DNA of 64,000 nucleotides, taken from the NCBI GenBank assembly GCA_002269645.1, contig NIVC01002455.1, forward strand, positions 62,001 through 126,000, written 5' to 3'. The notes beneath the pieces were generated by a model. That model worked only from the letters and a program-made list of their open reading frames with translations. It ran no database searches and was not told the DNA's origin. The stretch is from Macrostomum lignano (taxonomy: Eukaryota). Shown here one piece after another: positions 12,587 through 41,801 of the stretch. Both the position numbers and the translations under genes were made by a program. Each line of letters starts with the position of its first letter. Positions within the stretch are counted from its first letter, which is position 1.

Positions 12587-18280
<5,694 letters not shown>

Positions 18281-18492
18281 CGCTACGTTATATATAATAT
18301 TTATTAAATAGCGCATGAATGTCAAGTGACACTGGAAATTTGGTGCCTCTGGCAAAAATTCAAAATATCTTTTAACCGCTCATAGCCAGCATTCTGTTTT
18401 ATTAATTGAAAGAATTAATTATGTTGAAAATTGAAAACAAAAATTCAAATCCTGAATAAGTGCAACTGGCGGCTGCAACTCTGTCCCAGAGC

Positions 18493-21400
18493 TTATTTGG
18501 AAGGGTTTAGCGAAACTTGCTTGTGTGGCTGATGTGTCTGCTGCTGTTGCTGCTGCTGTTGCTGCTGCTGTTGCACAGTTGAAGCCAACGGCAAAGCCCG
18601 AAGATTTGACGCGGTCAATCCCTGACGCCTCTCCACGACCCTGGCAGTGCCGAAGCCCGCGTATTCAACATTGGCGTCCGCTTGCGCCTCATTTGCCGCA
18701 TTGACCGCCTTGGCAGCTGCTGCCTTCTTGTCAGCCTGGAGGTTGCTCCGGTTAATTATGTTGTTGCGCGACTTCGGCATCACTGAAATGCCGCCCGGGT
18801 AGGTAGACAGATTAGAAGGCAATTGGTAGGCAGAAAGGTAGGTACGTAGATAGGTAGGTAGAGAGATAGACAGATTGATAGGTAGGTGGGTAGGTAGGTA
18901 GGTAGGTAGGTAGGTAGGTAGGTAGGTAGGTAGGTAGGTATGTAGGTAGGTAGGTAGGTAGGTAGGTAGGTAGGTAGGTAGGTAGGTAGGTAGGTAGGTA
19001 GGTAGGTAGGAACGTAAGTAAATTGGTAGGTAGGTAGGTAGGAAGTTTTCTAGATATGTAGGTCAGTAGGTAGGTAGAGAGATTGATAGGTAGTGCGTAG
19101 GCAGGTACGTTAGCAGAAGTACTCTATAATAAAGGGTCGAAAAAACAGAAACAAACCCCTGGATGGGGGCAGCACATTCCGGCCAAACTGTCCGCTGTAG
19201 TTGCCGGGTGGGCGGTACCGGCCAACAACATAGACCCGGCCGGATTTGGACACCGCCCGGCCGAAACCGACCTCGGTTGAAGATCGCCAGACCAGCTGGG
19301 TAAAATGGCCTGCGATGCGGGATCACATCGAGTCAGCGTTGTGCTAGATGGTCCAGCAGTTGGTGTTCACATCTCTAAACTGTCACATCCTCAAACTGTC
19401 ACATCCTCAAACTGTCACATCCTCAAACTGTCACATCCTCAAACTGTCACATCCTCAAACTGTCACATCCTCAAACTGTCACATCCTCAAACTGTCACAT
19501 CCTCAAACTGTCACATCCTCAAACTGTCACATCCTCAAACTGTCACATCCTCAAACTGTCACATCCTCAAACTGTCACATCCTCAAACTGTCACATCCTC
19601 AAACTGTCACATCCTCAAACTGTCACATCCTCAAACTGTCACATCCTCAAACTGTCACATCCTCAAACTGTCACATCCTCAAACTGTCACATCCTCAAAC
19701 TGTCACATCCTCAAACTGTCACATCCTCAAACTGTCACATCCTCAAACTGTCACATCCTCAAACTGTCACATCCTCAAACTGTCACATCCTCAAACTGTC
19801 ACATCCTCAAACTGTCACATCCCCAAACTGTCACATCCTCAAACATTTTCATTCCTAAACTCTTCGGCCATTTGCTCACCGCAGGCCAGCTGATCCTCGC
19901 CTGTCCACTTGTACTGATCAATTTCGTGGTACCACAACTCGGAAAACAGATCGCCTTTAAAGAGAATTGCCGAGCAAGAAGAAGAAGATTAGCATTGCAG
20001 GATCCAAGGTGCAAAAATGATATTTTCAAAACGGGAGCATTACCTGGAAAATTAGTGAATCCTTTTCTAAACTTCATAGCCACATTCTCGCCCAGTCCGA
20101 GCGAGCTGCATTTGGGATCGTGCGCCATCTTGTCCTTGCCGGCCAGGACCTCCGCCCAGGCCTGGGCCAGCCTGGACAGCTCAGGGTTCAGGCGCAGCGG
20201 CGGCGACCGGTGCAACGCTCGGAACTCGTTGTGCGACACCAACAGCTGGTTCTCGAATTTCTTCTGGCTGAAGATCTGAGGGTCGGATGAATTTAGATAG
20301 CAAATTTCTGCTTTGGTGTCTATAAAAATCAGTCTACACATATGTTGAGATTATGTGGCAGAGCAGCGCGGTGGCAACCGCGTCTGACTCTCTCGCTACG
20401 AACCCGTGGTTCGATTCCGCGCAACCACATTCATTTGGGGCTTGTGTGTGCACGAAAATTGGCCCAGGGGGTTTGTCATGTCATTCAAAACCATGAGGGC
20501 CAACACCCCAAGGCACAGAGACTGTATATGCCTGACGATTAGAAAGTCAGTGCCGCTGTACACCCTGTGTGAGCTGTGTGTGTGAGAGCATGTCTGCCCT
20601 CAGGAGTACAGCGGAACGGGCAGAATTGCCTTACCCGGGTTTCACGTAACAGCAACAACAGCGTTACGGGATGTGCCTTGGGGCCTGGTAGTTACAAGTA
20701 AATGTGTACTTTTGAAGGGAGTGGGAATGCAGGTGCAAATTCAGGTGACCCGCAGAGTCAGCCCGCCATAGGAGGCAATAAGGCCTGTCTGATTTCGTTG
20801 ACACCTGAGCATGCATACGGATAAGTACGGAGGCACACTCTCGCACAGGATGTAAGAGCTGCCCTGACTCTTTCATCGTTATTTTAGGCACTAGTTCTGT
20901 GTCAGTCTGCTGTTCACATGAATCCGGTGTTCTAAAACTGTATTAAAGCAAAACAACTGAGCTGAGCTGCTCACTTTCTCATCGGATTTTGTCTCCTCCT
21001 TTTTCTCCGGCGCTCGCACGTGGCTCTGCTGCAGTGTCTGGCGAAGCAGCAGCGCCGCCACCGGACTCGAGGCCGCTTTGCCGCCGCCACCATCGGCGCT
21101 GCGCTGCGGCACAAAGTCGGTCAGGTTGCGCATTGCGGCGCTCCCTCCGCCCCCTCCGGCGCCGGTGCTGAACGTCACCGAGCGACGTTTCGCGGCGCCA
21201 AAGTCGCGCATCGCGAACGAAATCGGCGACGGCATCATCATTGGCTCCTTGACGATCTCTTCGCCGGCTGCTTTCACCACTGGAGAGAGATATTGGGCAG
21301 CAGTGACAGGTGCTTTATTCTGTTTAGTTGAACACAAATCTGTTAGCTACTAATTAGTAGTCTATATTGGACACGAACAGACATGTAAAAGTACATTTAT

Positions 21401-22734
21401 TTATAGAAAAGTTTACAATCGATAATGATACTGGTGCTTGAATCTGTGCAATGGTAGACATGTGCATTGCATATAGTATATGCAGCACAGATGTCATTAC
21501 TCCATGCTACTTATTTTACGCTAATGCAAAGATAAGGAGGCCGGCTGGATAGATAATAAAGATTGAAAAGCAGTCACGTGATGAAATTTCTAAATTGGGT
21601 AAATATTGGGGAGCGGCTGGTGGAATAAGGGTGAAAACTAATTGCTTTTGTGCCTGGGTGGTTTTGTCTTGGAAAATAGAATTTAGAATAGAATATCGAT
21701 TGACCATTCTAAATCATATTTTAGGACACTCTACTGAACTTAAGCGACTCGTCTCTCACGTGCATCCTTATCTCTCCCAGTCTTCTCTCAGACCGTCTTC
21801 CATCACTTATCTAATGTACACTTATTCGCGATCGACTGATTATCAATCAATGTACATTAGACCCGCCCACACTCAAGATGGAGTGTAAATCTTTCTAACC
21901 CTCCTCGTATCTTATCCATTTTTAATTGATTACGTTGCCCGTCCTGGATTAGCCTTTTTATTAATAACCAACCCTCCAGCTTGTCAAGTATGAAGTTGCA
22001 ATGCGGCCAGCATCGCTCACCATCATCAGCGCTTGGTAGAACATTCTTTCTAAATTCTCCTTTATAGTTGCCAGGCGGTCTGTAGCGGCCTACAACGTAC
22101 ACTCGGCCGGTGTCGGACACGGCCCGGCCGAAACCGACCTCTGTAGTGGACTTCCAGACTAGCTGGGTGAAATGGCCTGCCAATGATTATCAAATTGATG
22201 GGATGGAGAACTCCTTTGTAGATACGCTTAGCAACACTCAGCTGTGGGTTATGCGATTTGTGCGTCACAAGGCCTAGATTATTGGCCGGTGAGGAGAGAG
22301 TGAAGAGATTGAAGCTTGCAGTTAGAATTCTCAGTCCTCATTAACTGGTTTGGGGGTTGGAAATCTTAACATATTACTGTTTGTTTCTTCTTCTAGAAGC
22401 TCAGCAGAAAGCAATAGTTTTGCCTACCGCACTCGGGTTGCATCTCGTTGCTGTTCCAATCGTACGAGTCGATCTCTTCGTACCACATGTCCGTGAATAC
22501 GTCGCCTGGTAGGGTTTTACAGGGCATATGATAGCGTAGTTGCGTTTTAGTTAACAATTGACTACTTATAATTAAGTTCGCTGACGTTTTACAGCAATGG
22601 CTATATAGAGAATACAGGTCATATATTTAGAGCTGCGAGAGTATAAAACATTTTAAAATGCAGTTTTTCCCTCAGTCAATGTTTGTCTGAAGCATCAAAT
22701 TGGCTTCTCAAAGAAGAAAAATTAAAGAGAGAGA

Positions 22735-22810
<76 letters not shown>

Positions 22811-25800
22811 GTGGGAGAGGGAGAGGGAGAGAGAGAGGGAGATGGAGAGGGAGAGGGAGAGGGAGAGGGAGAGGGAGAGGGAGAGGGAGAGGGAGAGGGA
22901 GAGGGAGAGGGAGAGGGAGAGGGAGAGGGAGAGGGAGAGGGAGAGGGAGAGGAAGAGGGAGAGGGAGAGGGAGAAGGGAGAGGGAGAGGGAGAGGTATAC
23001 TCAGCAACATTGAAAAGTCGCCACTCTATGCGCCAGTGAGCAATTTCTCTTGGACTATTCTGAAATAAAAGATACGAGAAAACTGATCGGGGTAGCTTTA
23101 ATCCGTCCAACCCTCGCACACCGCTCGCCCACCACTTCATTCCTCAACTCAAGTCTGCCGCGGCTTAGCTGAGTTGCGTCACTCGCAAAGATTGAGAGAC
23201 TTTACCCGCACTCGCAAAAGTGGCGACCACAGACAGAATCTTCTGTGATTGCGACGCTTCGATGTTGCTGAGTATATAAAGAGATATAGAGATAGAGTAG
23301 AGAAAAAGAGAGAGAAAGAGCAAAGAGCTTACCTGGGAAGTTAGTCTCTCCAATGCGGAACTTCATAGCGATATTCTCTCCGGTGTTATTACTTGAGCAG
23401 TTGGGATCGTGCGCCATCTTGTCCCGCATCGCTAACACGTCTGCCCAGTCCTGGGCCAGCCTGTTCAGCTGGGGATTAAGCCGTAGCGGGCCGGCCTTGT
23501 GCTGGGCCCGGTACTCGTTGTGCGAGACCAGCATTTGGGTGACGAATTTGCGCATATTGAAAGCCTGTTTGTTGATTTGTATAATGTTTGCTTTTTCGCA
23601 TTTTTAGCTATTAGACTAGAAATCTTTGAGGTGCCGCAGGTCGTACGAGTATGAAAACATATTTGTAAAAAACTGTGATTGCATCGGATTATGCGGCAGG
23701 GCATAAAGGCGGAAATCTTCCATCCCCTGGGGGGGACCGAGTGCTAGTCCACCTATAGTAAACCTTCAATCTTCTATTATAAATTAAAAACCAATATGGC
23801 AAAGCATACCGGAACTGCCTCCTCCTCTAGATCTTCAGCTGAGGGTCTTTTCTGCCGAGTGTGCGAGCCGCCCAGCGTCTGGTGCAGGATGTTGGCGGTC
23901 AGGGGCCCCTTGGCGCCGCCTCCGTCAGATTTTCCCGACAGAGCGCCAAACAGCGACTTAGACGAGGCAGGCTCTGAATTGGCCGGGCCCTGAGCTTTTG
24001 ACTTCAAGGAGCCAAACAAAGACATTGCCGATACAGGCGCCGAGGCAGTAGGGCCAGCCGAAGACTTGGCACCAAGAGCGCCGAACAAAGACTTAGTAGA
24101 TGGGGCGGGCTCCTCATTAGTCGCTGTTGATAGCGGGGCTTCTGGTGCGGAGCTCGGAGATGACTTGACGGCAGGAGGCGTCGGCACTCGTTTGGCGGGC
24201 TCTCGGTCTGACGACGGCTCTCGCTCCGCCTTCGGCGACCGAGGCGCAAGTGGAGCAGCAGCTTCTCCTTTCCTGTTTTCAGCTGCTATGCCGGACACCC
24301 GCGATGCTCGATAGTCTGTTTGTAACAGAGGGATGAGCAAGCCAGTAAAATGCAAGATTTACACGCCGCTACCTACTTGCTAGGGGTGAGAATTTCCTTA
24401 GTGCTAGCAGAGATGTCTTATGAGCGGCAACTCACTCAAAGCAAACTCACTCCCAGAGGCCCGAGCTCTGGACACGCGCGGCAAAACGTTTCTTGGAAAT
24501 TCTCCGGGATTATTTCCCATCGGGCGGTAGCGGCCAACAATGTAGACGCAGCCGGACATGGAGATGGCTCTGCCGAAGCCGGCCTCGCGACTGGCGCGCC
24601 AGACCACTTGGGCAAAATGACCTGCGGTTTTCGGAATCGATCGGTGAGCGCCATTCAATGTAGCGAGTCTTTTCTCACTCTGCCGCGACTGTCAGCAAGT
24701 TTTTGCTCTTAGGTTTTTCAAATATTTAACTTACTGCATTCGAACTGATCTTCTAAGCTTCGCCAATTGAAATTGTGCACTTCAGCGTACCAGGTGTCCA
24801 CGAACTCTTGAGCTGATTATGTACCGGATGAGCACATTAAAAAGTTATCAATGGACACTTGCCATAGAAAAAATTTGAAAAATGTTTTGCAATACATTAT
24901 GTACTGTAGGATACTCTGACAATGGGTATGAGTATCTCAGTCAGAAGCTACCGCAGTAGAAGGCTTAAGAGGGTTTTAGCCTAGCAGTGGGGTTGTAGCC
25001 TAGCAGAGGGGTTGTAGCCTAGCAGGGGGTTGTAGCCTAGCAGGGGGGTTGTAGCCTAGCAGGGGGGTTGTAGCCTAGCAGGGGGTTGTAGCCTAGCAGG
25101 GGGGTTGTAGCCTAGCAGGGGGGTTGTAGCCTAGCAGGGGGGTTGTAGCCTAGCAGGGGGGTTGTAGCCTAGCAGGGGGGTTGTAGCCTAGCAGGGGGGT
25201 TGTAGCCTAGCAGGGGGGTTGTAGCCTAGCAGGGGGGTTGTAGCCTAGCAGGGGGTTGTAGCCTAGCAGGGGGTTGTAGCCTAGCAGGGGGGTTGTAGCC
25301 TAGCAGGGGGTTGTAGCCTAGCAGGGGGGTTGTAGCCTAGCAGGGGGGTTGTAGCCTAGTAAGGGAGTTGTAGCCTAGCAAGGGGGTTGTGGCCTAGCAA
25401 GGGGGTTGTAGCCTAGCAAGGGGGTTGTAGCCTAGCAGGGGGGTTGTAGCCTAGAAAGGGGTTGTAGGTAGTAAGGGGGTTGTAGCCTAGTGGTTAGAGC
25501 GTCAGACTCACGACTTGAAGGTCGGGGGTTCGATTCTTGATCCAACTGGAACAATTTGTGTCCTTGAGCAAGACAACTAACTCTGCATTGCTTCAGTTCA
25601 CCCAGCTGTAAAATGGGTGCCAGCATTAGCTGGGGTAATTGAGGGTGTGTGTGGCGACCCCCATTCCTTGGACTGAACAGCCGTACGCAGCCTTCAGATG
25701 CGCCGCGCAATAGCTGTGGCTGAGCTGTCGGTTGCACATCTGCCCAATAGGGCAGGTGTAATCAATTATTGTTATTATTATTTTTAACTCAGTAGCAATC

Positions 25801-28800
25801 CCTCTCGCGTTGACAATAATTTGGGACTGATATATCAAATTTGGCCTGGTCGCGTGTCGTGCGACTTCCAACCATGAAGGCCTATTTTTAAGAGTGCGCG
25901 CCTGCCTGACAATGGGACACTGTAGACCAGGGGCCCTCGGGTCCTTTGAAACTTCACAATAGCAGTCCGGCCCGCCTAAGGTTTGTGCCTCTTCTCAGCG
26001 CTCTCAGCCTTCTCTCCTCAGCCTTCTCTTATCTCTCCTATCTCTCTCTTATTCAATATCTCCCTTCTCTCATCTCTCTTCCCTCCTTTCCCTTCTTTCC
26101 TCTACCTTGTCTCATCTCCCTTCTCTCATCTCCCTTCTCTCATCTCCCTTCTCTCATCTCCCTTCTCTCATCTCCCTTCTCTCATCTCCCCTCTCTCATC
26201 TCCCTTCTCTCATCTCCCTTCTCTCATCTCCCTTCTCTTATCTCCCCTCTCTCATCTCCTTTCTCTCATCTCCTTTCTCTCATCTCCCTTCTCTCATCTC
26301 CCTTCTCTCTTTTCCATTCTCTCATCTCCCTTCTCTCATCTCCCCTCTCTCATCTCCTTTCTCTCATCTCCCTTCTCTCATCTCCCTTCTCTCTTTTCCA
26401 TTCTCTCATCTCCCTTCTCTCATCTCCCTTCTCTTCTCTACCTTCTCTCCTCTCCCTTATCTCATCTCCCTTCTATTCTCTTTGCGCTCTTCTCTTCTCC
26501 TCTATTCTCTCTTTTGTTTCCCTTCCTCTGGTCCGCAGTCATGCGCTGGCCATCTAACCATTTAGGTAAAAAATCAAGCCAAACCCTGCTGTAAACCCTG
26601 TGCTTGCTCAAAGGTCAGCTGCTTGCCGCCTCGGCTTGTTGCTCAATTGTCGCCAAAAGCCTTCTTACCTGTCACTTCCCCATGGCCAATGTCGCACTTT
26701 CTGGCCACGTTCTCGCCAATGCCAGCTGCGTCGCATTTCAAATCGTAGGCCAGCGAGTCTCGCTTTGCTAGCAGCTCCGCCCAGGCTTGCGCTTGCCGGG
26801 TCAGCTCCTCGCTGAACCGCAGCGGCGGCGACTGGTGCAGCGATCGGTACTCGTTGTGCGCAGCCAGCATCTGGGCAGCGAACTTGCGCGTGGTTGCATT
26901 CTGCAGGAGGGAGCAGCAGGGCAAACTACGCTGACATGTAACTTATTTTTTGTTGGAGACAGGGGCTCTGCGCACCCTGGTGCACTTCAAGCGACATTGT
27001 CACACAACCGGCGAGAGGCATTGCTGCCCATTCCACCGACTTCCCTGAGCAGCACACAAGCGCGCGGATACGGATGCAGTCACACGCACAGGCACAGACT
27101 CACACAGGAGTGTACAGCGGCCCTAACTCTATTAGTTAGGCATGTACACTTCACTGCGCCTTGGGGGTTGGCCCTCAAGGGCGTTAATTGCACGAGCAGA
27201 GCCAAGCCGAGATTCCGATTCAGCCCCAAACTTTTGTGACTGCACTTGGAATCGAGCCTGGGCCGCTGGCATATCAGAGCACCTCTAGGCTACGGCCCTC
27301 CCTGATAAGCAGCTTCTGGTACTCATTTCATAGCGTAAATAGAAACTTAAAAATGCAACCAATGAAATCAAAAAGGCCCTCACACTGTTCAGAGTGTTTG
27401 CTGAATCCAGATTAACAAATCTAGCCGTTGCCTCTTGCTGGCAAATGCCTTTGAAATGATCTGAAAAGAATTAAAATGTCAAACAGAACAGTGTAGCCAA
27501 TTTGAAGTTTTAATTAAACAGAATCAAGCTGTCACGAGCCACTTAAAAAAATCATTATTATTCCTCGACCTCAAGGCAGTTCAGATTGATGCACGTGACA
27601 ACAGCAAGGGCGAATGTAGTAGAAGAACGGCTATCTTGGTTTGTTTTAGAGAAACTATTAAAATATTGGTCATTGGTCAAAGCAGATCTAATTATTGTAC
27701 TTTTAATTCACCTTGCCTGTTTTATTGCTTAGCTCACTTATTGCAAAGTTTTATTACATTTTACGTAAATGCGCCAAGCCAAAACTCATAAGCTGGCCCA
27801 GTACGACTTTATATCTTAGTTTCCTGGCTCTTATTGTTATTTATTATAGTAAATCATAACAGTTTTGAAAGCAATTTCCTAGTTTACAATGCATACACAT
27901 AAACCTCCAACAGGTCTTCATGCTTCTAGCAAAGATTTGCTATATAAAATCCTCCTCTCTGACTCGTGGTTGCTCTGGCGCAAAACAGAACCCTGGGGAA
28001 CTCTGGCGCAAAACAGAACCCTGGGGAACTCTGTCGCAAAACAGAACCCTGGGGAACTCTGGCGCAAAACAGAACCCTGGGGAACTCTGGCGCAACGCCT
28101 TCGGCGAAATGGTTCCGCAACCAGAGCTAAGGCAATTCTGGCCATTCCGCTGACTCCTGAGCACATGCAAGCCCTCCAATACTGTACTCAAGTATGCACA
28201 CACACACACACGCTCACACGGGTGTACAGTGGCCCTGACTGTCTAATCGTCAGACATGTACACTCTGTGTGCCTTGGATGTTGGCCTTCATGGTTGCGAA
28301 TGGCACGGCAGCCCCGTGGGCCAAGTTTTGTGCACACACAAGCCCCCAATGAATGTGCATGGTTGCGCACCGAATCGAACCAGCTTGGTCGTGACGCGGA
28401 GTCGGACACGTTTACCGCTGAACTTCTCTGCCCCATTATCCACGATTAAGTGTAAATGCCACTTTAAACACCGTATTGGAGATGAAGTTATGATCCCCTG
28501 AAAACTGCAACTACCGTATTGCATGCACCTGAAAGCCGTGGAAACTCCGGGATCGGCTTACCGGGATCGGCCAGCGGCCGAACAATCAGCGCCGAATCGA
28601 GCGGTGAATCGGCGGCAGCTTCTATTGAGAACCGGAGCGGCAGAAGCCGTACGCACCTGCTTGCAGCTTTTGAATTGCTTAACTCCAGGCTCGAGGCTGT
28701 AGCGGTTGGCGAGTCGCCCCGCCGTTTCCGCCCAGCCGCGATGACTTTCGCCTGCGGCACCTGAAATCGGCGACTCTCGTAGCGGCTTCTTCGGCTGCGG

Positions 28801-28901
28801 CTTCGGGATCGGGAGCGATTGTCCTTCAGGTGGCGCTTGGCGGATTGCAACTGCCAGTCCTGCTGCGTCTCGGAACTTGACAGCCAGGGCAGCTCCACCA
28901 T
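18493..28901 (-). CDS. GLIPR2-like: Triple CAP/SCP-domain protein of GAPR-1/GLIPR2 type (14 exons, 2925 nt, 974 aa)
   Basis: Exons: 28901-28562, 27460-27384, 26900-26669, 24812-24735, 24621-24451, 24315-23810, 23564-23333, 22505-22428, 22176-22021, 21279-20975, 20275-20044, 19954-19880, 19309-19157, 18782-18493. All are GT-AG with compatible phases and the total is divisible by 3. The motifs HNE[YF]R, GEN[VI]A, WYxE, [GS]HF[TA]Q[VL]VW and GRYRPxGN each occur three times. AATAAA on the minus strand at 18398-18403 and 18300-18305. The first two and last exons are less certain than the CAP exons. Confidence 0.88.
18835..19075. repeat. (TAGG)n microsatellite
   Basis: GGTA tandem run in the last intron of the CAP gene. 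Confidence 0.95.
19368..19845. repeat. 16-bp minisatellite (CTCAAACTGTCACATC), about 30 near-perfect copies
   Basis: Directly visible in CAP intron 12. Explains ORFs 19305-20279 and 19348-19893. Confidence 0.98.
20355..20662 (+). mobile_element. tRNA-headed SINE, family B (copy 1)
   Basis: GGCAGAGCAGCGCGGTGG...GGTTCGATTCC head, body TTGGGGCTTGTGTGTGCAC...TGAGGGCCAAC...CCGCTGTACAC and a CAA-rich tail. Matches reverse-strand copies at 28112-28434 and 27003-27298. Confidence 0.8.
22726..22995. repeat. (GA)n grading into (GAGAGG)n
   Basis: Directly visible in a CAP intron. Confidence 0.97.
24971..25474 (+). repeat. 19-20 bp minisatellite GGGGG(G)TTGTAGCCTAGCA, about 26 copies, derived from the SINE A 5' end
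   Basis: The unit equals the first 16 nt of the SINE A head that follows at 25475 (GGGGGTTGTAGCCTAGTGG) plus a short linker. Confidence 0.95.
25475..25778 (+). mobile_element. SINE family A (copy 3)
   Basis: Nearly identical to 10127-10437; A/B boxes, CORE-like body and (TTA)-rich tail. Confidence 0.9.
25928..26588 (-). mobile_element. Non-autonomous hAT-type MITE with an expanded internal CT-rich minisatellite
   Basis: Begins CAGGGG and ends CCCTG. Flanks CTGTAGAC and CTGTAAAC are a 7/8 match (8-bp TSD). Internal CTTCTCAGCGCTCT and CCGCAGTCATGC...AGGTAAAAAA match the reverse complement of 48368-48564. The interior is about 14-bp CTCATCTCCCTTCT repeats. Confidence 0.75.
27003..27298 (-). 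mobile_element. SINE with a family B 3' body but a different head
   Basis: Minus strand GGGCCGTAGCCTAGAGG...GGCTCGATTCC head. The 3' half (TGAGGGCCAAC...CCGCTGTACAC...TGTGTGAG) matches family B. Confidence 0.7.
27973..28094. repeat. 28-bp minisatellite (CTCTGGCGCAAAACAGAACCCTGGGGAA), about 4.4 copies
   Basis: Directly visible next to the 3' end of the SINE B copy. Confidence 0.95.
28112..28434 (-). mobile_element. SINE family B (copy 2)
   Basis: The reverse complement aligns along the whole of 20355-20662, including the B box GGTTCGATTC. Confidence 0.8.
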
Positions 28902-31807: not shown

Positions 31808-34800
31808 ATGAAGAAACATGATGGGCTCCTGGCATTACTCATTCTGCTGTTCTGTCAGGCCTTAATTAGCAGCAATGCAATTAAAATTGCATCAGAGTAC
31901 AAGTTTTCTCAGCAGCACTACAATGCAACAGTGTTCAAGTTCAAGAACACGCCTGTCCAGCTGCAGCGGACACTCATCAGTTTAAAGACAGACAAGGCTG
32001 TCTCTTTCAGAGTAGCTGACGATAATTTCGTCAACTTCTTCATGCCATGGTCAGAGCATGTCGGCGGGGTCACATTCCTGCGTTTGCGCACGACCAACCT
32101 CGCTGCCAGCAGTCGAAATTTCACTGGCACCCTTGCTGTTCCAATCTCTGCCGAAATTGCTGGCGTTCCAACAGTTTCGCCTCGATGCATTCTCTATTTG
32201 AAGGTGTTGGCAGTCACCGAGCTGTGCCCATTCATTTCGGCAATCTCTTACACCTTTAGCATCGATTCCACCCAGAGTCTGTTCTCCACAATCGGTCACG
32301 TGCAGGTTGAAGTACCCTCCGGAGGCGAAACGTCGTACGTGCTCTACCTGCGGGACTTGTCTCCAGTGTTTACTCTGAATCCACACACCGGAGCCTTAGT
32401 ACTCACCAGCCGTCCGCTACAGAAAGAATACAAGCTTCGTGCTATTGTTGTCAATCCGAAGACGCGTAGCTGTCCGATTACAGAGAACTATAGTGATGTA
32501 CTGGTGACTGTCATAGTAAAAGATTTGGATAGGGTACCTGTGCAACAAATTACTGGTACCGTGAACGTCCTAAACCATGTGAATAATTTAGGCAAGGCTG
32601 GCAGTGTATTTGCGTGGCTTAATCTCACTGGAGCAAGCAATAGGTCTTCTGTTCAGATACTAAACAGCGAAGCTAACAACTACTTCGAATTTGTGCACAC
32701 CTCCGATTCTGCGTATCGACTGCAGCTGCGCAACGATTTCAGTTTTTCTCCCAGTGTGTCCCAGCGGCAATTCAACGTGAACTTTTCTGTTACTGATCCG
32801 GTTGATCAGGGCCAGCATTTTACGGGAAACTTCATTGTTAATCCTAACGATCGTAGTCTTCTTGGAATCGACCCCACTAACTTGGAATTTTTCGTATCCG
32901 TTCCAGAGTGTATGCCAGTTGGGTCTATTATCTTCCAGTTTCATTCTACTATCTATAATCAGACGCTGCCGCATATTAAATATCGCTACAACATGCTGCA
33001 AGGCAATTCTTACGTACATCTAGATGAAGACACGGGTGTCCTTGTTATCAAGTCGCCACTAGACGCTGAATCTGCTCCGAAGCTGTCTATATTTGCTCGA
33101 ATTCGCGATGCAGATAACCTAAGACGACTAATATTTCACACTCTCACAGTTGATGTGACTGACTGCAACGAATTCGCGCCCTCAATCGCGAACAATGCAA
33201 CAGTTCATTCCGTATCTGAGTCGGCAACGGTAGGAACTACGGTTTTAACGGTAGACGCTGATGATGCCGACGCCACACCGAGCGACTTGATCGTAAGCAT
33301 GGCTGAAAGTCCCGAAGTTCCCTTTGGCATTGTCGGGAAACGAATTGTGGTCAGTCGGTCTCTAGACTCAGAAACAATGGCCGCAAACTATACTCTCTAT
33401 GTGAGAGTCTCTGATCAGGGCCAGCCAATTCCAAGGGAATCACTAGCTATCTATTATGTCAATATTAATCCAGAAGACGAGTTTCGTCCGGAATTCGAGT
33501 CGGACTCTTGTGTTGTCGACCTATTGCGAAGCGATAAAAGCTTCGAGACAGGACATTTTCCAGCTCTGGATCTCGACTATCCATTTGCACCGGTGACTTA
33601 CAAAATCTTCGACGATCCTCTTGGTGGCAGATGTTTTACAATTAGTAGCACAACTGGCAATTTAAAACTAGTATGTGACCTAAATGGAGTGATAAATGAT
33701 CAAATTGTGCTCTCTATAGTTGCCACTGACCGTGCGGGTCGCGAGTCGCCAAAGTTGCGTGTGCGATTCAACATCTTAGACAATTTGCAGTTTTCTACCA
33801 AAAGAACGCGCTGTGTTCAGCACGTACGTAGTGTTACCGAATTATATGAGGCTAACAAAAAGGCGCGCAATAGTCACGAAGTGTCTGTTCAAATGTTTGA
33901 ATCATTACAGTCTCGGTCTTTTGGTGATCACTTGCCTAACCGGCCACCGTTGTTGAACTCCGTGCTGTCGTCGTTTTCTGTTCCAGAAAATATTGGAATC
34001 GGACAAACAGTGGCCAGTTTTTTTGCAGAGGATCAGGATCCTTATGGATCTTACAATGGTCGTCTGCAGTTTCGCATTGATTCTGGGAACATTGGCTACG
34101 CATTCAATGTTACTCAGAGGCTTGATAAGTTTTCAACTGATGAAACAGACGACAGTGAAGGCTCTAGGCGCGTCAGCTTAGTTGTTCTAAATGAATTAGA
34201 TAGAGAGAAACGTGAGACCTACATGCTTAACATTACTGTGTGCGATATGGGCGAGCCAAGTTATTGCTCCACATTATCTCACGTAATGATTCGCGTGTTA
34301 GACGTCAATGACAACTCGCCACTGCTTGAATCGCCAGTATTTGATGTCACTGTTCCCGAGGACACGCCGATTGGTACTGAGATTTGTCGATTTTCCGCTA
34401 CGGATCCTGACGCCGGTTCCAACGGAACTGTCCGATACAGCGTCAGCGATACGAACGCCTTTTCAATCAATTCAAACACTGGCGTCCTGCGCACAGCATC
34501 TCGAGACCTGCTAGATCGCGAGTCCGTCTCGGTATACGATCTTCTAGTGCGCGCGCACGACAGCGGGCAGCCCGAGCGCAGCTCGGAGCTGCACTTCCGT
34601 GTAAATATTGCCGACGAGAATGATCATGCGCCTACTTTCATCACGAAGAGTCCCGGTCCAAGTAGCAGCGAGAGACTGGCGTTAACTATCAGCGAGGACA
34701 TTCCTGTCAATTCTTTTCTGACTCGACTCATTGCCGTTGACAGCGACTATGGTGAAAACGGACGCATTGTGTACAGCCTGTCTGGCGTACCGAAAGTTCT

Positions 34801-37800
34801 GTCGCACTTTGTAATCGACCAGGACTCGGGCTGTCTGTACTTAGCCAAGCCTTTGTCGGCAGAGCTGTCGCCCTATCAATTGTTTGTGGACGCCAGAGAC
34901 TCTGCGATAGCGCCGAAGCGGAGCAGAATCTCTCTAAACATCAACGTTGTTGCAGCGGTGCCTCCGCCAGTTTATATAATCTTCTCCGAAGCTGTCTACT
35001 CATTTTCATTAAGTGAAGATGTAAGAGTTGGTACATCGGTGGGTCGCATTAATACTACAATTTATCCTAATATCGCCGCATCCGGCAGTATCACCGTTGG
35101 CTATGTTATCACGTCGGGTAGTGGACTTGGACGATTCACTATTGACCAGACTGGTGAGTTTTCATTGGAAGTTATTTGTGGCCTAGGAATTGCATTCCAG
35201 TGCGGCAAAGTGGGATAAGATGGAACACAGGTTATTTGCTCATTTTCTTTTCTGCTTAGACTGCCGTAGACCCTGCTCTGCTAAGCCCGCATGAGTCATG
35301 GGCGAGGAGAGCTAGCCGGGCCGCCCTCTTATGTCACGAGAGTCCCAGTTCCCCTAGGCCTAGCTAAACTCTTGTTCCCCACTCCTAGAGAGTCGCCCCG
35401 GCCCCCTTTTTGCTTTCCTATGGTCCCCTCTGCCAGATGTCTCTGTTAGACGAAGAAACGCACAGCTCGAGTAGCGGGGCAGAGAGGCGAGCTGTCCAGC
35501 CTGGGCAGTGATGAGGCATTATTGCGCGTGGCTGAAACAGGCAAAAGACTTAATACACAGCTGCTGGCTAGCTGAGCTCTTCCCTTGGCCTAATCGGCGT
35601 CGCTTCCGGGTTTTTCTTGTTGAAATGTTTGGTCTTCGTGCCTGTTTTAACTTTCAAACAAAAGCTGTGGCGCTAGTTTCTTTATCTATAATGCAGCTCT
35701 TTTGTTCTTTGCCGAGTGGCGCCTGCTATTAATGGCACAATAGCTTGAATTGACTCTAGAATAACACAGTTTTGTCCCCCCCCTCGGGGGTTAGTTGGAT
35801 ATAACAATCGGTAATAAGGACCAACGCAGATATGACAACTCGATGGCTTAAGCCCGAAGTAAATAGCGTTTGCTTGTTAGTCTCGGAGAACCTTAGAAAG
35901 CTGAATGAAATATGGGATCCTAATTCTCGGAGACCTGCTGCTTGGCTCTCCTGAGAGAATCGGATCGTGTCTGCAGGTGGGGCTTGAGGTCGAGCTTAAG
36001 CGAGCAATCGTGTATTGCTATCGGCTGTTTCGCCACGGCCCTGTATGTAACACGTGTGCAAGCGTGACCGCAGTGTGTAGATATGGTGGCGTGGGCGCAT
36101 GATTAAGTGGGGCTCCCTTCGTCCCTCTGAATTCAATAATTTGCAACAGGGCGCGGACAGCGTGTCGACTCTCTGCGGGTCTCTTAAGCCATCTATCCTT
36201 CATCATCCGGTACCCGGTGTTTTTTTGTGTTTCTTTTTCGATTTTGTCAGCAAAAAAATTTGCCTCAGTCAGTCTCACTGTACGTCTGATGCTTCGTTAA
36301 ATTCGTCATCATTCATCAATAATTTCATCTAACTCCACTCCACGGAAAAGTTTCTCTTGAACAGCAATAGCCAACCTATAGAGGAGGCCGCAGAGAGAAA
36401 AAATGGCGTGAGAGTGCATTTTGAAGAGAGGCGGCGAGTTTTGGTGGCTGTTGGTGTCCAGAATCGGTGTCTATTCACTCTCATCTGCGACTGCTATTTA
36501 TGAAAATACTGTACGATTCGAAATATTCGTATAAGGACTCGGATTTTTAGACGTATTCGCATACACAAAATTCAGATAAACGATTAGTAATTTAATTCAA
36601 AATCAAATATTGAGTGACAGGCTTTACTTTGTCAAACCAAAAAACTCTTAATTCTAAAAGCACTAAATTAATGCCCCCTAATTTTGTGTCTAAAGGCTTA
36701 GTTGGCAGGAAAACTCTTCCAGCTCTGCTTGCCCCTGGGTCTTTCTCATTACTAACCTGGAAAAAGACTGTGTTGCATGTCTCTTCTGCTTTCTACCTTC
36801 ACTAATTAACTATCGGTAGTTGCCGGAAGGAAAGCCTAGTAAAAACAGGCTGTATAATAATACTATAGAGAGCTTTTACACCTGTATTTTACCTACAGTT
36901 TGTAGCTAATATAAGTAAGCTCTCCTGTTTCGATACAATCTACGTAATAGTTAATTAAACCGTGTTCTTTGTTTCTTTTGCTACAATAGTTTCATAATAC
37001 GACTAAAATATTTGTTATGTTTTCATTGGACCTAGAAAAAATCCTACGTAAGTAAGTTCTCTTTATACAACCTCACATCTGTTTCTCCCAGCTACGTGCG
37101 TGAATCGCGTGCTTCAATTAGAAACGTATGGCGCTTAATTTCCTGTTAATGCTAAGCACCTCTTACCTAGTGCATTCCCATTTTGGTCTTAATTTTCCTA
37201 GGGGGTAATTCCCTTGACTACCCTTAAAAATATAAAAATAGTCCATGGTATAGGGCAAAAGCTAATGGGCGCTAAGGCTGATTATTGTCTATTTTTCATC
37301 CCCAAAAGAGCGCCCGAATTTTCTGTCGCTCTGCATGGCAAATGAAATCAGATCGACTGGATCTTGCACGTTAGCGCTGCGGCGTCTTTAGGGGGGGGGG
37401 GTCGGGTGGGTTAGGCGGGGCAGCCCAAGGGAAAGGGTAGTCAACACCGTTGCGGATTCCGCAAGGTTGTACCTCGTATAGCCGGCTGGCTTTGTACTTT
37501 TACTAAAGAAATTTCTACAGCACTTATTCGTTAGTCGGGTATACTGTATGTACTTTGCACAAAAAACGAAAGAAAAAGCAGCAAAAATAATCTACAAGTC
37601 CCATATTTTGGGCGTGGTTTAGAAAGTCCTTTTCTGCAGTTATTAGCGCAATTTTTCATTGATTGCATAAATCGATAAACATAAATTGTGATCTAATTAG
37701 ATGACGAGAAATTTTGTCATGGTTGCTCCCGCCGTTTACCCCGCCGCATAATGTTTTCGTCACGACTCACCAACAGGCGAGATTCGCACTAGAATTCCGC

Positions 37801-40800
37801 TGGACAGGGAGAGCCAGCCGGCCGGCTTGTGGCTCACAGTGCACGCCTATCTGCTGGCCGGCCAGACCGTGGTCACCCACGCCGAGGAGAAGATCTCAAT
37901 CTGCCAGGTGTACATCAACCTAGAGGATGTGAATGACTATCGACCGATGCCAACTGACCAGACGCACTACAGGCTGCAGCTGGTGGAGGCCGCTCCGGCC
38001 GGCACTGTACTGCTTAGCAGCATACCGGCTATGGACCAGGATCTGGGCGACAATGCCAGCATAGTTTATGCCATTACCGACGGCAATACTGCGGGACATT
38101 TTCGTATCGACCCTGAGACAGGTGAGAATATCTGAGCTTATCTCATTAGTACTAGTGTGAAAACTAGCACATAACTATGCAGCTGCTTGAAAAGGTGCTA
38201 ATTGTTTCGCTAATAATAAAACACCTGTCATAATTTTATAAGGCGTTTGTATATACTTTGCACGGCGTAAAGCTAAATTGTGTCCTATTGTGTCTCTCAC
38301 ACCTCTAGGCCGGTTGACAACAACAGAATTGGCAGTTGATCGCGAAGTAGCCGACCAATTCCTGCTGACTGTCAGCCTCGCTGACCGGGGCGCGCCGCCT
38401 CTCAGCACCGACCTGCTAGTGGAGATTGCCGTATCGGATTTAAACGATTCACCGCCTAAGTTTGTACGGCCGCTGTTCCAGGTCACGGCTATTGCTGACA
38501 GCTCAGCTGAGGGGACGTCAAACGGTGAGAGTTAATTGGATGATGCCGATGATGGCTCAAATGCGATCCTGCGCCATCCGCTCTACCTACTGCATTAATA
38601 ATTATTGGATTAAGTTAATTTAATCTGTCACAGATGCTTAGATGGGACTGGGAAATGATTTATCACTAGTAGGCTTTTTAGTTCCCTCTCTGGAACAGCT
38701 GATGCCCAACTTTTATTGCCATTGAGACATCTACTAAGCCGGTGGTAATACGCTAATTTAATAAGGAATGCCTCCATGCCACTCTATGGGGCCCTTTTAG
38801 TGCGCGTGTACTTTAAACATTTGCCTGCCGCCCTCAGATGACGAGCAAGTCCTGCTGACTCGCCTGCCAGCCGTCGACAAGGACCTGCTAGAGAATGCCA
38901 CCATTCTGTACTCGCTGCAGCCGTCTGGGTCCGGGGTTCGAATCTCTAAATCTACAGGCGAATTGAGCATCTCTCCCAGGCTGCTCAGATTAGATACTGG
39001 CGTCGGTTCCAATATGATGACATTCACCGTGGTTGCTAAGGACGCCGGCAGGCTGGAGCTGTCAGCGATGGCTTCTGTCAAGCTGACGATCGAGCAGCAG
39101 CAGCCGACTTTGCCGGAGCCCGACGCTGGCACAGCTGTCGACTTGTTTCAAATTGATGTCTCCGGCGGCGACGGCGCCGATGCGGTTGTCCGATTGTTCG
39201 ACAATCTGGCGCTGGAGGACAGCGTGCCGAGATTGTTGGTCACACCGGCTGTTACCATGGCAACTAAAATGCTGTTTACTCTCACTGGTGAGTTTGTGAA
39301 GATTTCTTATACCTATCTATACTGACATCTAATTCATTTTTTACCTGGCAGGCTATCCCATATTCCAAAGCATAGTCTATCCCATATTCCAAAGCATAGT
39401 CTATCCCATATTCCAAAGCATAGTCTATCCCATATTCCAAAGCATAGTCTATCCCATAATCCAAAGCAAAGTCTATCCCATATTCCAAAGCATAGTCTAT
39501 CCCATATTCCAAAGCATAGTCTATCCCATATTCCAAAGCATAGTCTATCCCATATTCCAAAGCATAGTCTATCCCATATTCCAAAGCATAGTCTATCCCA
39601 TATTCCAAAGCATAGTCTATCCCATATTCCAAAGCATAGTCTATCCCATATTCCAAAGCATAGTCTATCCCATATTCCAAAGCATAGTCTATCCCATATT
39701 CCAAAGCATAGTCTATCCCATATTCCAAAGCATAGTCTATCCCATATTCCAAAGCATAGTCTATCCCATATTCCAAAGCATAGTCTATCCCATATTCCAA
39801 AGCATAGTCTATCCCATATTCCAAAGCATAGTCTATCCCATAATCCAAAGCATAGTCTATCCCATATTCCAAAGCATAGTCTATCCCATATTCCAAAGCA
39901 TAGTCTATCCCATAATCCAACACATAGTCTATCCCATATTCCAAAGCATAGTCTATCCCATAATCCAACACATAGTCTATCCCTTATTCAACCACATCGT
40001 CTAACAAAGCTTCATATTCATTCTCTACTCTGTATATGTAGTTGAAATTATACTCAAAAATACTCGTATTTGCGCCTATTATATTTTATTATATAGTATA
40101 TCACAGTGTACGGTATTTTCAGTAGCTGTTATTTAATGTGCAAGCTTAGGGTAATCCAGCACTCTAGCTAGCCATAAAGTTATGTTTTATGCGAATTTTC
40201 ATCGTTCAGTTACACAATAGAAAGCTGTGGCCGTTTCTTAGCCAGCTGCCCAATGCGCTAGCCTAAGACCATTCATTCATTCGTCTGCTCCATCGCGCTT
40301 TGCAGGCCGGGGCAGCGAAGATTTCTACATGCCGCAGGCTGGCGGCCGGCTGCAGCTCATCAGGCGGCTCAGCCACGCCCGTCAGGCGGTTTACAATCTC
40401 ACTGTTGGCGCCAGACTCGGTGCTCGCTTGCAGACCAAATCGGTGAGATTGATGCGTTACCTGAGTTGATTATTTGAGAATGTTTGAAAATTCCCAGATA
40501 AAGGGCATGGGAGAATTTGGGGTCTGGCCGGATGACCTGGATGTTGCCTGAGCCACTGATAGTGTCCCACAGAAAGCATTGATAACCTTTAACACCTGAG
40601 CCACTGATAATGTCCCACAGAAAGCATTGATAACCTTTAACACCTGAGGCACTGATAGTGTCCCACAGAAAGCATTGATAACCTTTAACACCTGAGGCAC
40701 TGATAGTGTCCCACTGAAGGCATTGATAACCTTTAACACCTGAGCCACTGATAGTGTCCCACAGAAAGCATTGATAACCTTTAACACCTGAGCCACTGAT

Positions 40801-41801
40801 AATGTCCCACAGAAAGCATTGATAACCTTTAACACCTGAGGCACTGATAGTGTCCCACAGAAAGCATTGATAACCTTTAACACCTGAGGCACTGATAGTG
40901 TCCCACTGAAGGCATTGATAACCTTTAACACCTGAGCCACTGATAGTGTCCCACTGAAGGCATTGATAACCTTTAACACCTGAGCCACTGATAGTGTCCC
41001 ACTGAAGGAAGTGACCTTTAGGAGATCAGGAGAAATCCAAGAGTGCTGCATGGTGCTATCAGCTGCAGGTAGTGAGTGAGTCAGTAAAATTCATCCCAGT
41101 GTGTCAGACACCCCCTTCCCTGTGCCATTCTGCTCGTGGATTTCGTTGGTCCGACCTGAATAGCGCGCAATGTCTCTATTCTGCGCATATTTGCTTTTTA
41201 TTATATGAAAGCGTTGCCGCATTGCCTTAGCTATAGACCAGGATAGTGCTATAGACCAGCTATAGGTGGTAGCATAGGTAAAGCACTCGAACTGCCTTAT
41301 AAAGGCATTCGATAGGCTTAGGATATAGTAGATTCGGAATACAATCTAGTCAGCCCAAGGTGAAATCGAATTGCGCCGCGGCGGTCTGGTGGCGTAGGGC
41401 GAGACTGGGGAGGATGGGTGGAGAGATAGGGGGGGGGACAATTAAATAAGGCGTAAGGATAAGCAGATAGGGAATGGATTGAATTTGAGTGCAATGCTAC
41501 ATTATATATGCTGCGTCCAGTGGAGAGGGGGGTTGAAAGTTCTCTGCCGATTTTTTCATTTTAAGTAGCGATTTCTTTTCCGTGCGTGTGTTTATATTGT
41601 AGCTGTATAGCTATGTGGCGTATCCTATCTGCCGGCGCTGGTTACAAGGAAAGGCATTCTGTCTAAGTGGGGCTGTAGGCTAAACTTGTGATAAAAAGGG
41701 ACACTAAAAGATGAAGGAGAGATTAGTAGGAATAAACAAAAAAGCTGGAGTAGGGAGAAGGACAGGCATACAGACAGATCGAAGTAGGGAAACAGACAGG
41801 C

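What the first reader, a model, noticed from the sequence alone, without database searches (positions are those of the whole stretch)
18493..28901. Three-domain intracellular-type CAP (GAPR-1-like) protein built from symmetric exon modules
Seen: three CAP domains, each split 232 bp / 78, 78 or 75 bp / C-terminal exon. Modules exon 3-6 (987 nt) and exon 7-10 (771 nt) both start and end in phase 0, and both linkers carry LxQTLxxSHxR. There is no signal peptide; the N-terminus has RSRSRSRSRR and the C-terminus polyQ. Domain 1 has Tyr (SLAYD) where domains 2 and 3 have the first tetrad His (KMAHD). Known: GAPR-1/GLIPR2 is a single-domain protein that dimerises and oligomerises, and schistosome SmVAL11 has two domains; the 78-bp middle exon matches my recollection of human GLIPR2. 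Inference: an intragenic triplication producing a covalent CAP oligomer with one degenerate site.
Basis: partly seen in the sequence, partly recalled or inferred. Interest (0 to 1): 0.72.

Follow-up and report, generated by a model that had tools for sequence, protein, structure and literature searches.

The report
Flatworm gene with three CAP domains
A minus-strand gene of the flatworm Macrostomum lignano encodes three GAPR-1/GLIPR2-like CAP domains in a row. It is real but ordinary, because such multi-domain versions are widespread in animals and most of this one is already in UniProt.

Summary
On the minus strand, 28901-18493, a 14-exon GT-AG model gives a 2925-nt ORF (974 aa) with three Pfam CAP domains (E 2.5e-56). 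Each domain is split 232 / 78, 78 or 75 / C-terminal exon by two phase-1 introns. The 987-nt and 771-nt modules, the LxQTLxxSHxR linker motif, the RS and polyQ tracts and the Tyr-for-His change in domain 1 are all present.

The window is Macrostomum lignano. UniProt A0A1I8HNE1 is a partial model of the same gene with the same junctions.

The three domains group together in a neighbour-joining (NJ) tree (bootstrap 84%; D2+D3 90%), so a lineage-specific intragenic triplication is supported.

- Among 181 proteins retrieved by the homologue searches, 99 have two CAP domains, 37 have three and some have up to eight.
- Three-domain proteins named GLIPR2 exist in shark, tilapia and salmonids, and similar unnamed ones in echinoderms and beetles.
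- A crinoid three-CAP gene has the same 232/78 phase-1/1 layout, which is the published signature of group 2 VAL genes.
- A non-canonical tetrad in one domain is also common.

Unresolved without RNA-seq are the N-terminus (exon 1 has no outside support) and a rival reading as three SL-trans-spliced single-domain genes.

The parts
28562..28901 (-). Proposed exon 1 (340 nt). ATG at 28901 with an in-frame stop just upstream. Encodes a disordered N-terminus with RSRSRSRSRRSR (28817-28782). Donor CCCG|gtaagc, phase 1.
   Evidence: The only open frame that splices in phase into exon 2. The codon-usage signal is marginal, and three protein searches found no other protein containing it. Inferred, not shown.
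27384..27460 (-). Exon 2 (77 nt), DHFKGICQQEATARFVNLDSANTLNS, phase 1 to 0.
   Evidence: 100% match to residues 1-25 of UniProt A0A1I8HNE1. Only one of the three frames is open.
24451..26900 (-). CAP domain 1, exons 3-5: 26900-26669 (232), 24812-24735 (78), 24621-24451 (171). Tetrad YEEH, with the Tyr inside SLAYD at 26756-26742.
23810..24315 (-). Linker 1, exon 6 (506 nt), phase 1 to 0. Disordered and Pro/Ser/Ala-rich, with three SLFG[AS]L repeats and LHQTLGGSHTR (23887-23855).
   Evidence: Open in the required frame with a clear codon-usage signal. Homologous to linker 2.
22021..23564 (-). CAP domain 2, exons 7-9: 23564-23333 (232), 22505-22428 (78), 22176-22021 (156). Tetrad HEEH.
   Evidence: Junctions are identical to those in A0A1I8HNE1.
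20975..21279 (-). Linker 2, exon 10 (305 nt), with LRQTLQQSHVR (21046-21014). An alternative weaker acceptor lies at 21312.
   Evidence: (A0A1I8HNE1 uses SADD|VVKAAG and DEK|IFSQ).
19157..20275 (-). CAP domain 3, exons 11-13: 20275-20044 (232), 19954-19880 (75), 19309-19157 (153). Tetrad HEEH. The exon 13 donor GGG|gtttgt is weak.
18493..18782 (-). Exon 14 (290 nt): C-terminal tail with Q12 (18573-18538) and a TAA stop ending at 18493.
   Evidence: In-frame codon-usage score is clearly above the other two frames. No homologue found.
18300..18408 (-). Two AATAAA poly(A) signals, starting at 18403 and 18305, about 90 and 190 nt after the stop.
   Evidence: By contrast there is none in the inter-module introns 6 and 10.

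Best explanation
This is a Macrostomum lignano group 2 VAL / GLIPR2-like gene. As modelled, it encodes one cytosolic 974-aa protein with three GAPR-1-type CAP domains joined by long disordered linkers.

Origin. It arose by two rounds of tandem duplication of an exon block inside the gene, in the macrostomid lineage. D1 split off first. Then a linker+domain block (exons 6-9) was most likely copied to give exons 10-13. This is easy in this family because the ancestral unit (about 232 nt, about 78 nt, then a C-terminal exon, with both internal introns in phase 1) is phase-symmetric, so copies stay in frame. The same expansion has happened repeatedly in other animals.

Function, inferred from GAPR-1. 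Each domain keeps the alpha-beta-alpha CAP core and an aromatic WYxE[VI]xx[FY]xW segment on the 78-bp exon, which I take to be the caveolin-binding-type motif. D2 and D3 keep the His/Glu/Glu/His tetrad that binds Zn2+ in GAPR-1. D1 has Tyr for the first His and probably does not bind Zn2+ in that way, yet dN/dS of about 0.3 indicates it is still under purifying selection. Tethering three domains would raise avidity for membranes, lipids or partners, which GAPR-1 achieves by non-covalent dimerisation and oligomerisation.

Shown: the domains, exon structure, relatedness and residue states. Inferred: one mRNA, the N-terminus, localisation and biochemical activity.
For: - Domains and model: three PF00188 stretches in a single continuous 14-exon GT-AG model with consistent phases.
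- Coding signal: the proposed frame scores best for codon usage in every exon, including both linkers.
- Independent model: UniProt A0A1I8HNE1 joins D1-D2-D3 with identical junctions.
- 3' end: no AATAAA or ATTAAA in the 245-nt and 699-nt inter-module introns, but two just after the final stop.
- Closest structure: GAPR-1 is the best solved relative of D1 and D2.
- Tetrad states.
- Duplication history: D1+D2+D3 clade 84% and D2+D3 90% bootstrap. L1 and L2 are homologous, with 0 of 500 shuffles reaching the score.
- Selection: dN/dS 0.21-0.32 with dS about 1.3 for all domain pairs.
- Ancestral intron pattern: the same positions in a crinoid three-CAP gene (232/78/245, 274/78/221, 250/78/152, modules in phase 0) and in the M. 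lignano single-domain paralogue (81-nt middle exon). Phase 1/1 is published for group 2 SmVALs (PMC2270263).
- Precedent: multi-CAP relatives are abundant.
- Zn2+ role: His54/His103 in GAPR-1 (PMC6900432).
Against: - No transcript evidence for any junction.
- A0A1I8HNE1 is a partial, frameshift-patched automatic model, so it is weak as independent support.
- Three protein searches found no other protein covering exon 1, exon 14 or the linkers. Low-complexity words may have crowded the candidate lists.
- The Logan collection (assemblies of public sequencing runs) holds short contigs for apparent relatives of the single-domain paralogue (P0067, P0208; source species unknown). It holds none for this gene.
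- The exon 6 donor (gtatgc) and the exon 13 donor (gtttgt) are off the M. lignano GT[G/A]AG consensus.
- Exon 1 codon usage is barely better than in another frame.
- dS is saturated, so dN/dS values are rough.
- The NJ tree is a simple distance tree on 151 columns.
Confidence: 0.7

Rival explanations
1. These are three tandem single-CAP genes rather than one fusion, each a CAP domain plus a disordered tail. They would be transcribed as an operon or as neighbours and resolved by SL trans-splicing. The M. lignano spliced leader ends in ATG, and the first exon of each domain (26900, 23564, 20275) begins in phase 0 directly after AG. The SL would therefore supply an in-frame start for each: MNATTRKF..., MAFNMRKF..., MIFSQKKF.... 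A mixed version is also possible, with both fused and internally trans-spliced products.
For: - The SL sequence ends in ATG, 30% of M. lignano genes are trans-spliced and 15% lie in operons. Operon gaps peak near 100 bp, with a 1-kb cut-off (PMC8629364).
- The inter-module gaps are 245 and 699 nt, the latter holding a 243-nt repeat.
- Read-through past the linker donors reaches stops after 10 and 28 codons.
- Exon 7 also has its own in-frame ATG at 23555.
- The single-domain paralogue P0180 is likewise a CAP domain plus a tail of about 100 aa.
- All homologues start directly at the CAP domain.
Against: - No AATAAA or ATTAAA in either gap, whereas the true 3' end has two.
- Phase-matched GT donors sit exactly where the L1/L2 similarity ends.
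- Only the exon 3 acceptor (CTGCAG) fits the published trans-splice motif [T/C]TNCAG. Exons 7 (AAACAG) and 11 (CCTCAG) do not (PMC8629364).
- An automatic gene model fused them.
- Fused multi-CAP proteins are the rule in relatives.
Confidence: 0.22
2. It is a single fused gene, but the mature mRNA starts at exon 3 by SL trans-splicing. The protein would then be about 836 aa and begin MNATTRKF, right at domain 1 like its homologues. The RS-rich exon 1 would be outron, UTR or an unrelated ORF.
For: - The exon 3 acceptor CTGCAG matches the trans-splice motif, and the SL ATG would be in frame.
- The exon 1 codon-usage signal is marginal.
- No database protein contains the exon 1 peptide.
- A0A1I8HNE1 lacks exon 1.
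Against: - Exon 1 is a 113-codon open frame from an ATG preceded by a stop. It ends at a consensus GTAAG donor in exactly the phase exon 2 needs.
- Exon 2 is open in only that frame and is included in A0A1I8HNE1.
- An upstream cis donor normally suppresses trans-splicing (rule quoted in PMC8629364).
Confidence: 0.3
3. The three-domain architecture is ancient and shared with the three-CAP GLIPR2-like proteins of echinoderms and vertebrates, or it is an orthologue of the double-domain SmVAL11 plus one extra domain. On this view the within-protein similarity is due to concerted evolution.
For: - Three-domain proteins with the same intron layout exist in crinoid, starfish, brittle star, shark and teleosts.
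- Double-domain VAL11 orthologues are reported across flatworms, including a planarian (PMC3435950).
Against: - Each M. lignano domain's nearest relatives are its sister domains and the M. lignano single-domain paralogue, not position-matched domains elsewhere.
- Echinoderm and beetle domains group by position within their own clades only.
- dS of about 1.3 between domains argues against recent homogenisation.
- SmVAL11's two domains are reported to have different intron boundaries (PMC3435950), whereas all three here are identical.
Confidence: 0.08

Closest known systems
Human GAPR-1 / GLIPR2 (PDB 1smb, 4aiw)
   Same: It is the best solved-structure relative of D1 and D2, E 3e-25 and 5e-28 over the full domain. 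It also has no signal peptide. The His54/Glu65/Glu86/His103 tetrad is kept in D2 and D3, and the aromatic WYxE...W segment is conserved.
   Different: GAPR-1 has one domain of 154 aa and an N-terminal MG, which is myristoylated according to my recollection of the literature. This model has three domains, long linkers and starts MVEL, with no Gly2. D1 has Tyr at the His54 position. About 40% identity.
Multi-domain GLIPR2-like proteins of other animals. Examples: 'GLI pathogenesis-related 2' of Hemiscyllium (501 aa), Oreochromis (500 aa), Hucho (534 aa) and Salvelinus (731 aa). Uncharacterised three-CAP proteins occur in Anneissia, Acanthaster, Amphiura and beetles, with 4-8 domains in amphioxus, lungfish, Brienomyrus and Hydra.
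   Same: They have tandem GAPR-1-type CAP domains without a signal peptide. The crinoid gene has the same 232/78 phase-1/1 layout with phase-0 modules. Non-canonical tetrads in some domains are common.
   Different: Their linkers are short (20-50 aa) and they start directly at domain 1. The M. lignano domains do not group with theirs, which points to independent expansion. The LxQTLxxSHxR and SLFGxL linker motifs and the RS and polyQ tails are unique to the M. lignano gene among the 224 proteins retrieved.
Platyhelminth group 2 VALs, including the double-domain SmVAL11 (Chalmers et al. 2008, PMC2270263; Chalmers and Hoffmann 2012, PMC3435950)
   Same: Same phylum. No signal peptide, no six-Cys pattern, and two conserved phase-1 introns within the SCP/TAPS domain.
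   Different: There are three domains rather than one or two. All three have identical intron positions and are each other's closest relatives. SmVAL11 instead pairs an early-diverged clade 2a domain with a clade 2b domain that has different intron boundaries. Orthology to VAL11 was not tested, because no SmVAL11 sequence was in hand.
M. lignano single-domain paralogue (PAA70587.1 / A0A1I8I0J0 / A0A1I8HYI6)
   Same: It is the closest outside relative of D2 and D3 (56-58% identity) and of D1 (51%). It has the same intron positions, with an 81-nt middle exon, and is also a CAP domain plus a disordered tail.
   Different: It has a single domain and an unrelated tail. Short assembled contigs for apparent relatives of it are in the Logan collection.

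Membership tests
CAP / SCP-TAPS superfamily (Pfam PF00188) | Significant match to the CAP domain profile over its full length | tested here: met
   Three stretches, whole-protein E 2.5e-56 and 190 bits against a cut-off of 21.1. The best stretch covers profile positions 4-117 of 117.
CAP / SCP-TAPS superfamily (Pfam PF00188) | Conserved His/Glu/Glu/His tetrad of the central cavity | tested here: met
   D2 and D3 are HEEH and D1 is YEEH, by hmmalign against GAPR-1 numbering. This is met for two of the three domains.
CAP / SCP-TAPS superfamily (Pfam PF00188) | Alpha-beta-alpha sandwich fold | not tested
The fold is inferred only from full-length sequence alignment to 1smb.
Group 2 (intracellular, GAPR-1-like) VAL / GLIPR2 type | No signal peptide | tested here: met
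   No hydrophobic stretch was found: maximum KD19 0.82 over the whole protein and maximum KD10 0.89 in the N-terminal 60 residues. No SignalP was available, and the result depends on an unverified N-terminus. The alternative start at exon 3 is not hydrophobic either.
Group 2 (intracellular, GAPR-1-like) VAL / GLIPR2 type | Two conserved introns inside the domain, both phase 1 (PMC2270263) | tested here: met
   Phase 1/1 in all three domains. The same positions occur in a crinoid homologue and in the M. lignano paralogue.
Group 2 (intracellular, GAPR-1-like) VAL / GLIPR2 type | Lacks the six conserved cysteines of secreted group 1 proteins | tested here: inconclusive
   The domains carry only 2-4 Cys, and GAPR-1 is by far the best PDB match, ahead of the secreted members. 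No explicit alignment to group 1 VALs was made.
Group 2 (intracellular, GAPR-1-like) VAL / GLIPR2 type | Intracellular or Golgi-membrane localisation, with N-myristoylation in GAPR-1 | not testable with these tools
   The modelled N-terminus MVEL has no Gly2. Localisation is unknown.
SmVAL11-type double-domain orthologue group | N-terminal clade 2a domain plus C-terminal clade 2b domain with different intron boundaries (PMC3435950) | tested here: not met
   All three domains share identical intron positions and form one clade. No SmVAL11 sequence was included, so the clade assignment itself was not tested.
Single transcription unit (one fused gene) | Transcripts spanning the exon 6/7 and 10/11 junctions | not testable with these tools
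   Only indirect support is available: phase-matched donors, no poly(A) signals in the gaps, and an automatic model that fuses the domains.

The most novel reading that the evidence does not exclude
Because the M. lignano spliced leader ends in ATG, an ancestral single-CAP gene that was trans-spliced at a phase-0 acceptor would yield tandem copies already in frame with one another. The locus would then be caught between an operon of single-CAP genes and a fused three-CAP gene. It might express both forms from the same acceptors, used in cis when the upstream linker donor is used and in trans otherwise. That would be a concrete route from SL operon to multidomain protein. It could also help explain why CAP-domain multiplication recurs.
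Probability: 0.12. Interest if true: 0.55.

Novelty: new member of a known kind. Interest (0 to 1): 0.2.

Why it matters
The main value is as a corrected annotation. It gives a complete 14-exon model for a gene that UniProt holds only as a frameshift-patched fragment. It also shows that the "GLIPR2 is single-domain" view is mammal-centred.

The comparative result is modestly useful. The phase-symmetric 232/78 exon unit is shared from flatworm to crinoid, and it has been multiplied independently in several animal lineages.

The biology of covalently linked GAPR-1 domains, such as avidity for membranes, Zn2+-dependent assembly and autophagy control, is unstudied. This locus offers no special handle on it beyond what shark, fish or echinoderm genes already offer.

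Tried and rejected
- Protein searches. Three homologue searches were run with the core protein, with the non-CAP parts only, and with the N-terminus to D2 stripped of low-complexity runs. The aim was to find any M. lignano or macrostomid protein or transcript ORF covering exon 1, the linkers or exon 14. Only A0A1I8HNE1 came back, and one attempt timed out.
- Structure prediction. I did not substitute the frameshifted P0001.
- Pfam. The N-terminal 139 aa and the C-terminal tail gave nothing.
- Linker homology. The C-terminal tail and the N-terminus were tested against the linkers and neither was significant (z 1.4-1.9 and 0.3-1.4).
- tRNA scan. I scanned for a tRNA-derived origin of the intronic repeat and found none.
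- Literature. A search for described three-CAP GLIPR2 proteins found nothing specific.
- Scripts. A first Biopython bootstrap run timed out and was replaced by a numpy version. An exact-splice script failed on L002, so I read the junctions directly.
- Alternative acceptor. I considered 21312 for exon 10, which gives 338 nt. I rejected it in favour of 21279, which has a better polypyrimidine tract and is the one used in A0A1I8HNE1.

Full report
**What is there**

The window is eukaryotic. On the minus strand between 28901 and 18493, tblastn with the GAPR-1/GLIPR2 sequence finds three sets of CAP-domain segments.

I rebuilt the exons from the sequence. Fourteen exons, all with GT-AG introns and consistent phases, give a 2925-nt ORF of 974 aa.

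Each CAP domain is encoded by a 232-nt exon, a 78-, 78- or 75-nt exon, and a C-terminal exon of 171, 156 or 153 nt. Both internal introns are in phase 1. Single linker exons of 506 and 305 nt join the domains.

Pfam finds three CAP stretches, E 2.5e-56.

The two LxQTLxxSHxR motifs, the RS run, the Q12 run and SLAYD against KMAHD are present. The Tyr aligns with His54 of GAPR-1, so the tetrads read YEEH, HEEH and HEEH. No hydrophobic N-terminus or TM segment exists.

**Organism and existing annotation**

The best database hit is UniProt A0A1I8HNE1, an 'SCP domain-containing protein' of Macrostomum lignano. It matches the window exons at 100% and uses the same junctions: EVT|AQE, NFPG|DVF, SADD|VVKAAG and DEK|IFSQ. 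It also includes exon 2.

It is a fragment running from exon 2 to exon 11. Several stretches are frameshifted or read through introns, which is typical of an automatic model on an indel-rich assembly. Most of the gene is thus already in a public database, unnamed and incomplete.

**How unusual is the architecture?**

It is not unusual. The full-library search with domain 3 alone found 9441 relatives. I pooled its 150 listed hits with the other proteins retrieved so far, 181 in all. Of these, 99 have two near-complete CAP domains, 37 have three, and others have four to eight.

Named examples:
- Three-domain 'GLI pathogenesis-related 2' in a shark (501 aa), tilapia (500 aa), Hucho (534 aa) and Conger. 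A longer 731-aa GLIPR2 is annotated in Salvelinus.
- Three-domain proteins in crinoid, starfish, brittle star and beetles.
- Four domains in amphioxus, five in lungfish, seven in Brienomyrus and eight in Hydra.

The sampled proteins start directly at the first CAP domain, without a signal-like sequence.

**The exon pattern is ancestral**

I mapped the crinoid Anneissia three-CAP protein onto its genomic locus. The exons are 232/78/245, 274/78/221 and 250/78/152 nt. The phase-1 introns lie at the same two positions, and each module is in phase 0.

The M. lignano single-domain paralogue (PAA70587.1) has the same two positions, with an 81-nt middle exon. Chalmers et al. 2008 (PMC2270263) list 'conserved intron phase 1/1' as the gene-structure signature of the signal-less, Cys-poor group 2 SmVALs.

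The symmetric modules are thus a family trait. They make tandem copies stay in frame, and they are not a peculiarity of this gene.

**Is it an intragenic triplication?**

Yes, as far as the data go.
- Identities are D2-D3 70%, D1-D2 50% and D1-D3 54%.
- The nearest outside relative of every domain is the M. lignano single-domain paralogue, at 51-58%.
- In an NJ tree of 49 domains, D2+D3 has 90% and D1+D2+D3 has 84% bootstrap. Echinoderm and beetle domains group by position only within their own clades. The expansions are therefore independent.
- dS is about 1.3 (saturated) for all pairs and dN/dS is 0.21-0.32. The copies are old, and all three, including D1, look constrained.
- Linkers 1 and 2 are homologous over about 85 residues (z 5.2, 0 of 500 shuffles). 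Neither resembles the N-terminus or the C-terminal tail.

With D2 and D3 as sisters, the simplest history is that the last duplication copied linker+domain (exons 6-9, 972 nt) to exons 10-13 (765 nt), a phase 1-1 unit.

**The 'degenerate' site**

His54 and His103 coordinate Zn2+ in GAPR-1, and H54A abolishes Zn2+/heparin-induced amyloid-like assembly (PMC6900432). D1's Tyr therefore probably disables that site.

This too is common. Only 65% of the 424 related domains are HEEH. Tyr is the second most frequent residue at that position. Of 151 multi-domain relatives, 92 have at least one non-canonical domain.

**What remains uncertain**

(a) One mRNA or three?

M. lignano trans-splices 30% of its genes to a leader that ends in ATG. 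About 15% of its genes sit in operons, with gaps typically near 100 bp and under 1 kb (PMC8629364).

Exons 3, 7 and 11 all begin in phase 0 right after AG, so the leader would give an in-frame start at each. Read-through of the linker donors meets stops after 10 and 28 codons.

Several points argue against three separate genes:
- Neither inter-module gap has AATAAA or ATTAAA, while two follow the final stop.
- The linker donors are phase-matched.
- Only the exon 3 acceptor fits the published trans-splice motif.
- Fused relatives are the norm.

I put the fused gene at about 0.7.

(b) The N-terminus.

Exon 1 is a 113-codon open frame from an ATG preceded by a stop. It ends at a GTAAG donor in the phase exon 2 needs. 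However, its codon-usage signal is marginal and no other protein contains it. The alternative is the leader ATG spliced to exon 3, giving about 836 aa that start at the CAP domain.

**Function**

No function can be shown here. By analogy with GAPR-1, I expect a cytosolic, membrane-peripheral protein in which three tethered CAP domains give multivalent binding. D2 and D3 would be Zn2+-competent and D1 not.

The linker motifs are unique to this gene among the 224 proteins retrieved. The N-terminal region and the C-terminal tail have no Pfam match. Their roles are unknown.

**Verdict**

The feature is real and was accurately read, and the triplication inference is supported. It is nevertheless an ordinary member of a widespread, already annotated class. 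Interest is low.

Noticed in passing
window 12673-18280: A (CTAA)n microsatellite of about 5.6 kb and about 1400 copies ((TTAG)n on the gene's strand). It begins about 210 nt after the CAP gene's stop codon. It accounts for the GC 0.25 and GC-skew -0.9 block in the composition profile.
   Followed up: partly
window 19367-19844, 22726-22995, 24971-25490, 26008-26474, 27973-28095, 18825-19077: Most of the larger introns of the gene are filled by tandem repeats: 16 bp x30, GA-rich, 19 bp x28, 14 bp x33, 28 bp x4.4 and (GGTA)n. They create long spurious ORFs on both strands.
   Followed up: partly
window 20349-20591 (intron 10), 28194-28440 (intron 1, inverted), 27087-27180 (intron 2): A dispersed repeat of about 250 bp at about 80% identity is present three times inside the gene. 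ARAGORN finds no tRNA in it.
   Followed up: partly
window 31808-35218 and further + strand ORFs to about 59900: A large FAT-like cadherin gene lies divergently upstream of the CAP gene. The first ORF has a signal-like N-terminus and five Pfam cadherin stretches, E 4.6e-80.
   Followed up: partly
window 1-2130 and 6556-8885 (+): These are two paralogous long ORFs with similar sequence blocks. One has a C-terminal TM segment (weak Syndecan-type hit) and the other a weak Ig_2 hit. They are probably tandem copies of a single-pass membrane protein gene.
   Followed up: no
window 39282-39971 and 40470-41051 (-), 47213-47903 (+): Further tandem-repeat blocks give long repetitive ORFs (YGIDYALE..., INAFSGTLSVAQVLKV..., CLSVLSV...). 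They probably lie in introns of the cadherin gene.
   Followed up: no
window 24074-24091, 24005-24022, 23939-23956 (linker 1): There are three SLFG[AS]L repeats spaced about 22 residues apart in linker 1. A related SFAMRDFGAAK lies in linker 2. Neither was found in any other retrieved protein.
   Followed up: partly
UniProt A0A1I8HNE1 (P0001) against window 24436-24654 and 24004-24249: The public model switches into other reading frames and reads through part of intron 5. This is consistent with homopolymer indels in the older assembly. The window sequence restores the CAP frame.
   Followed up: partly
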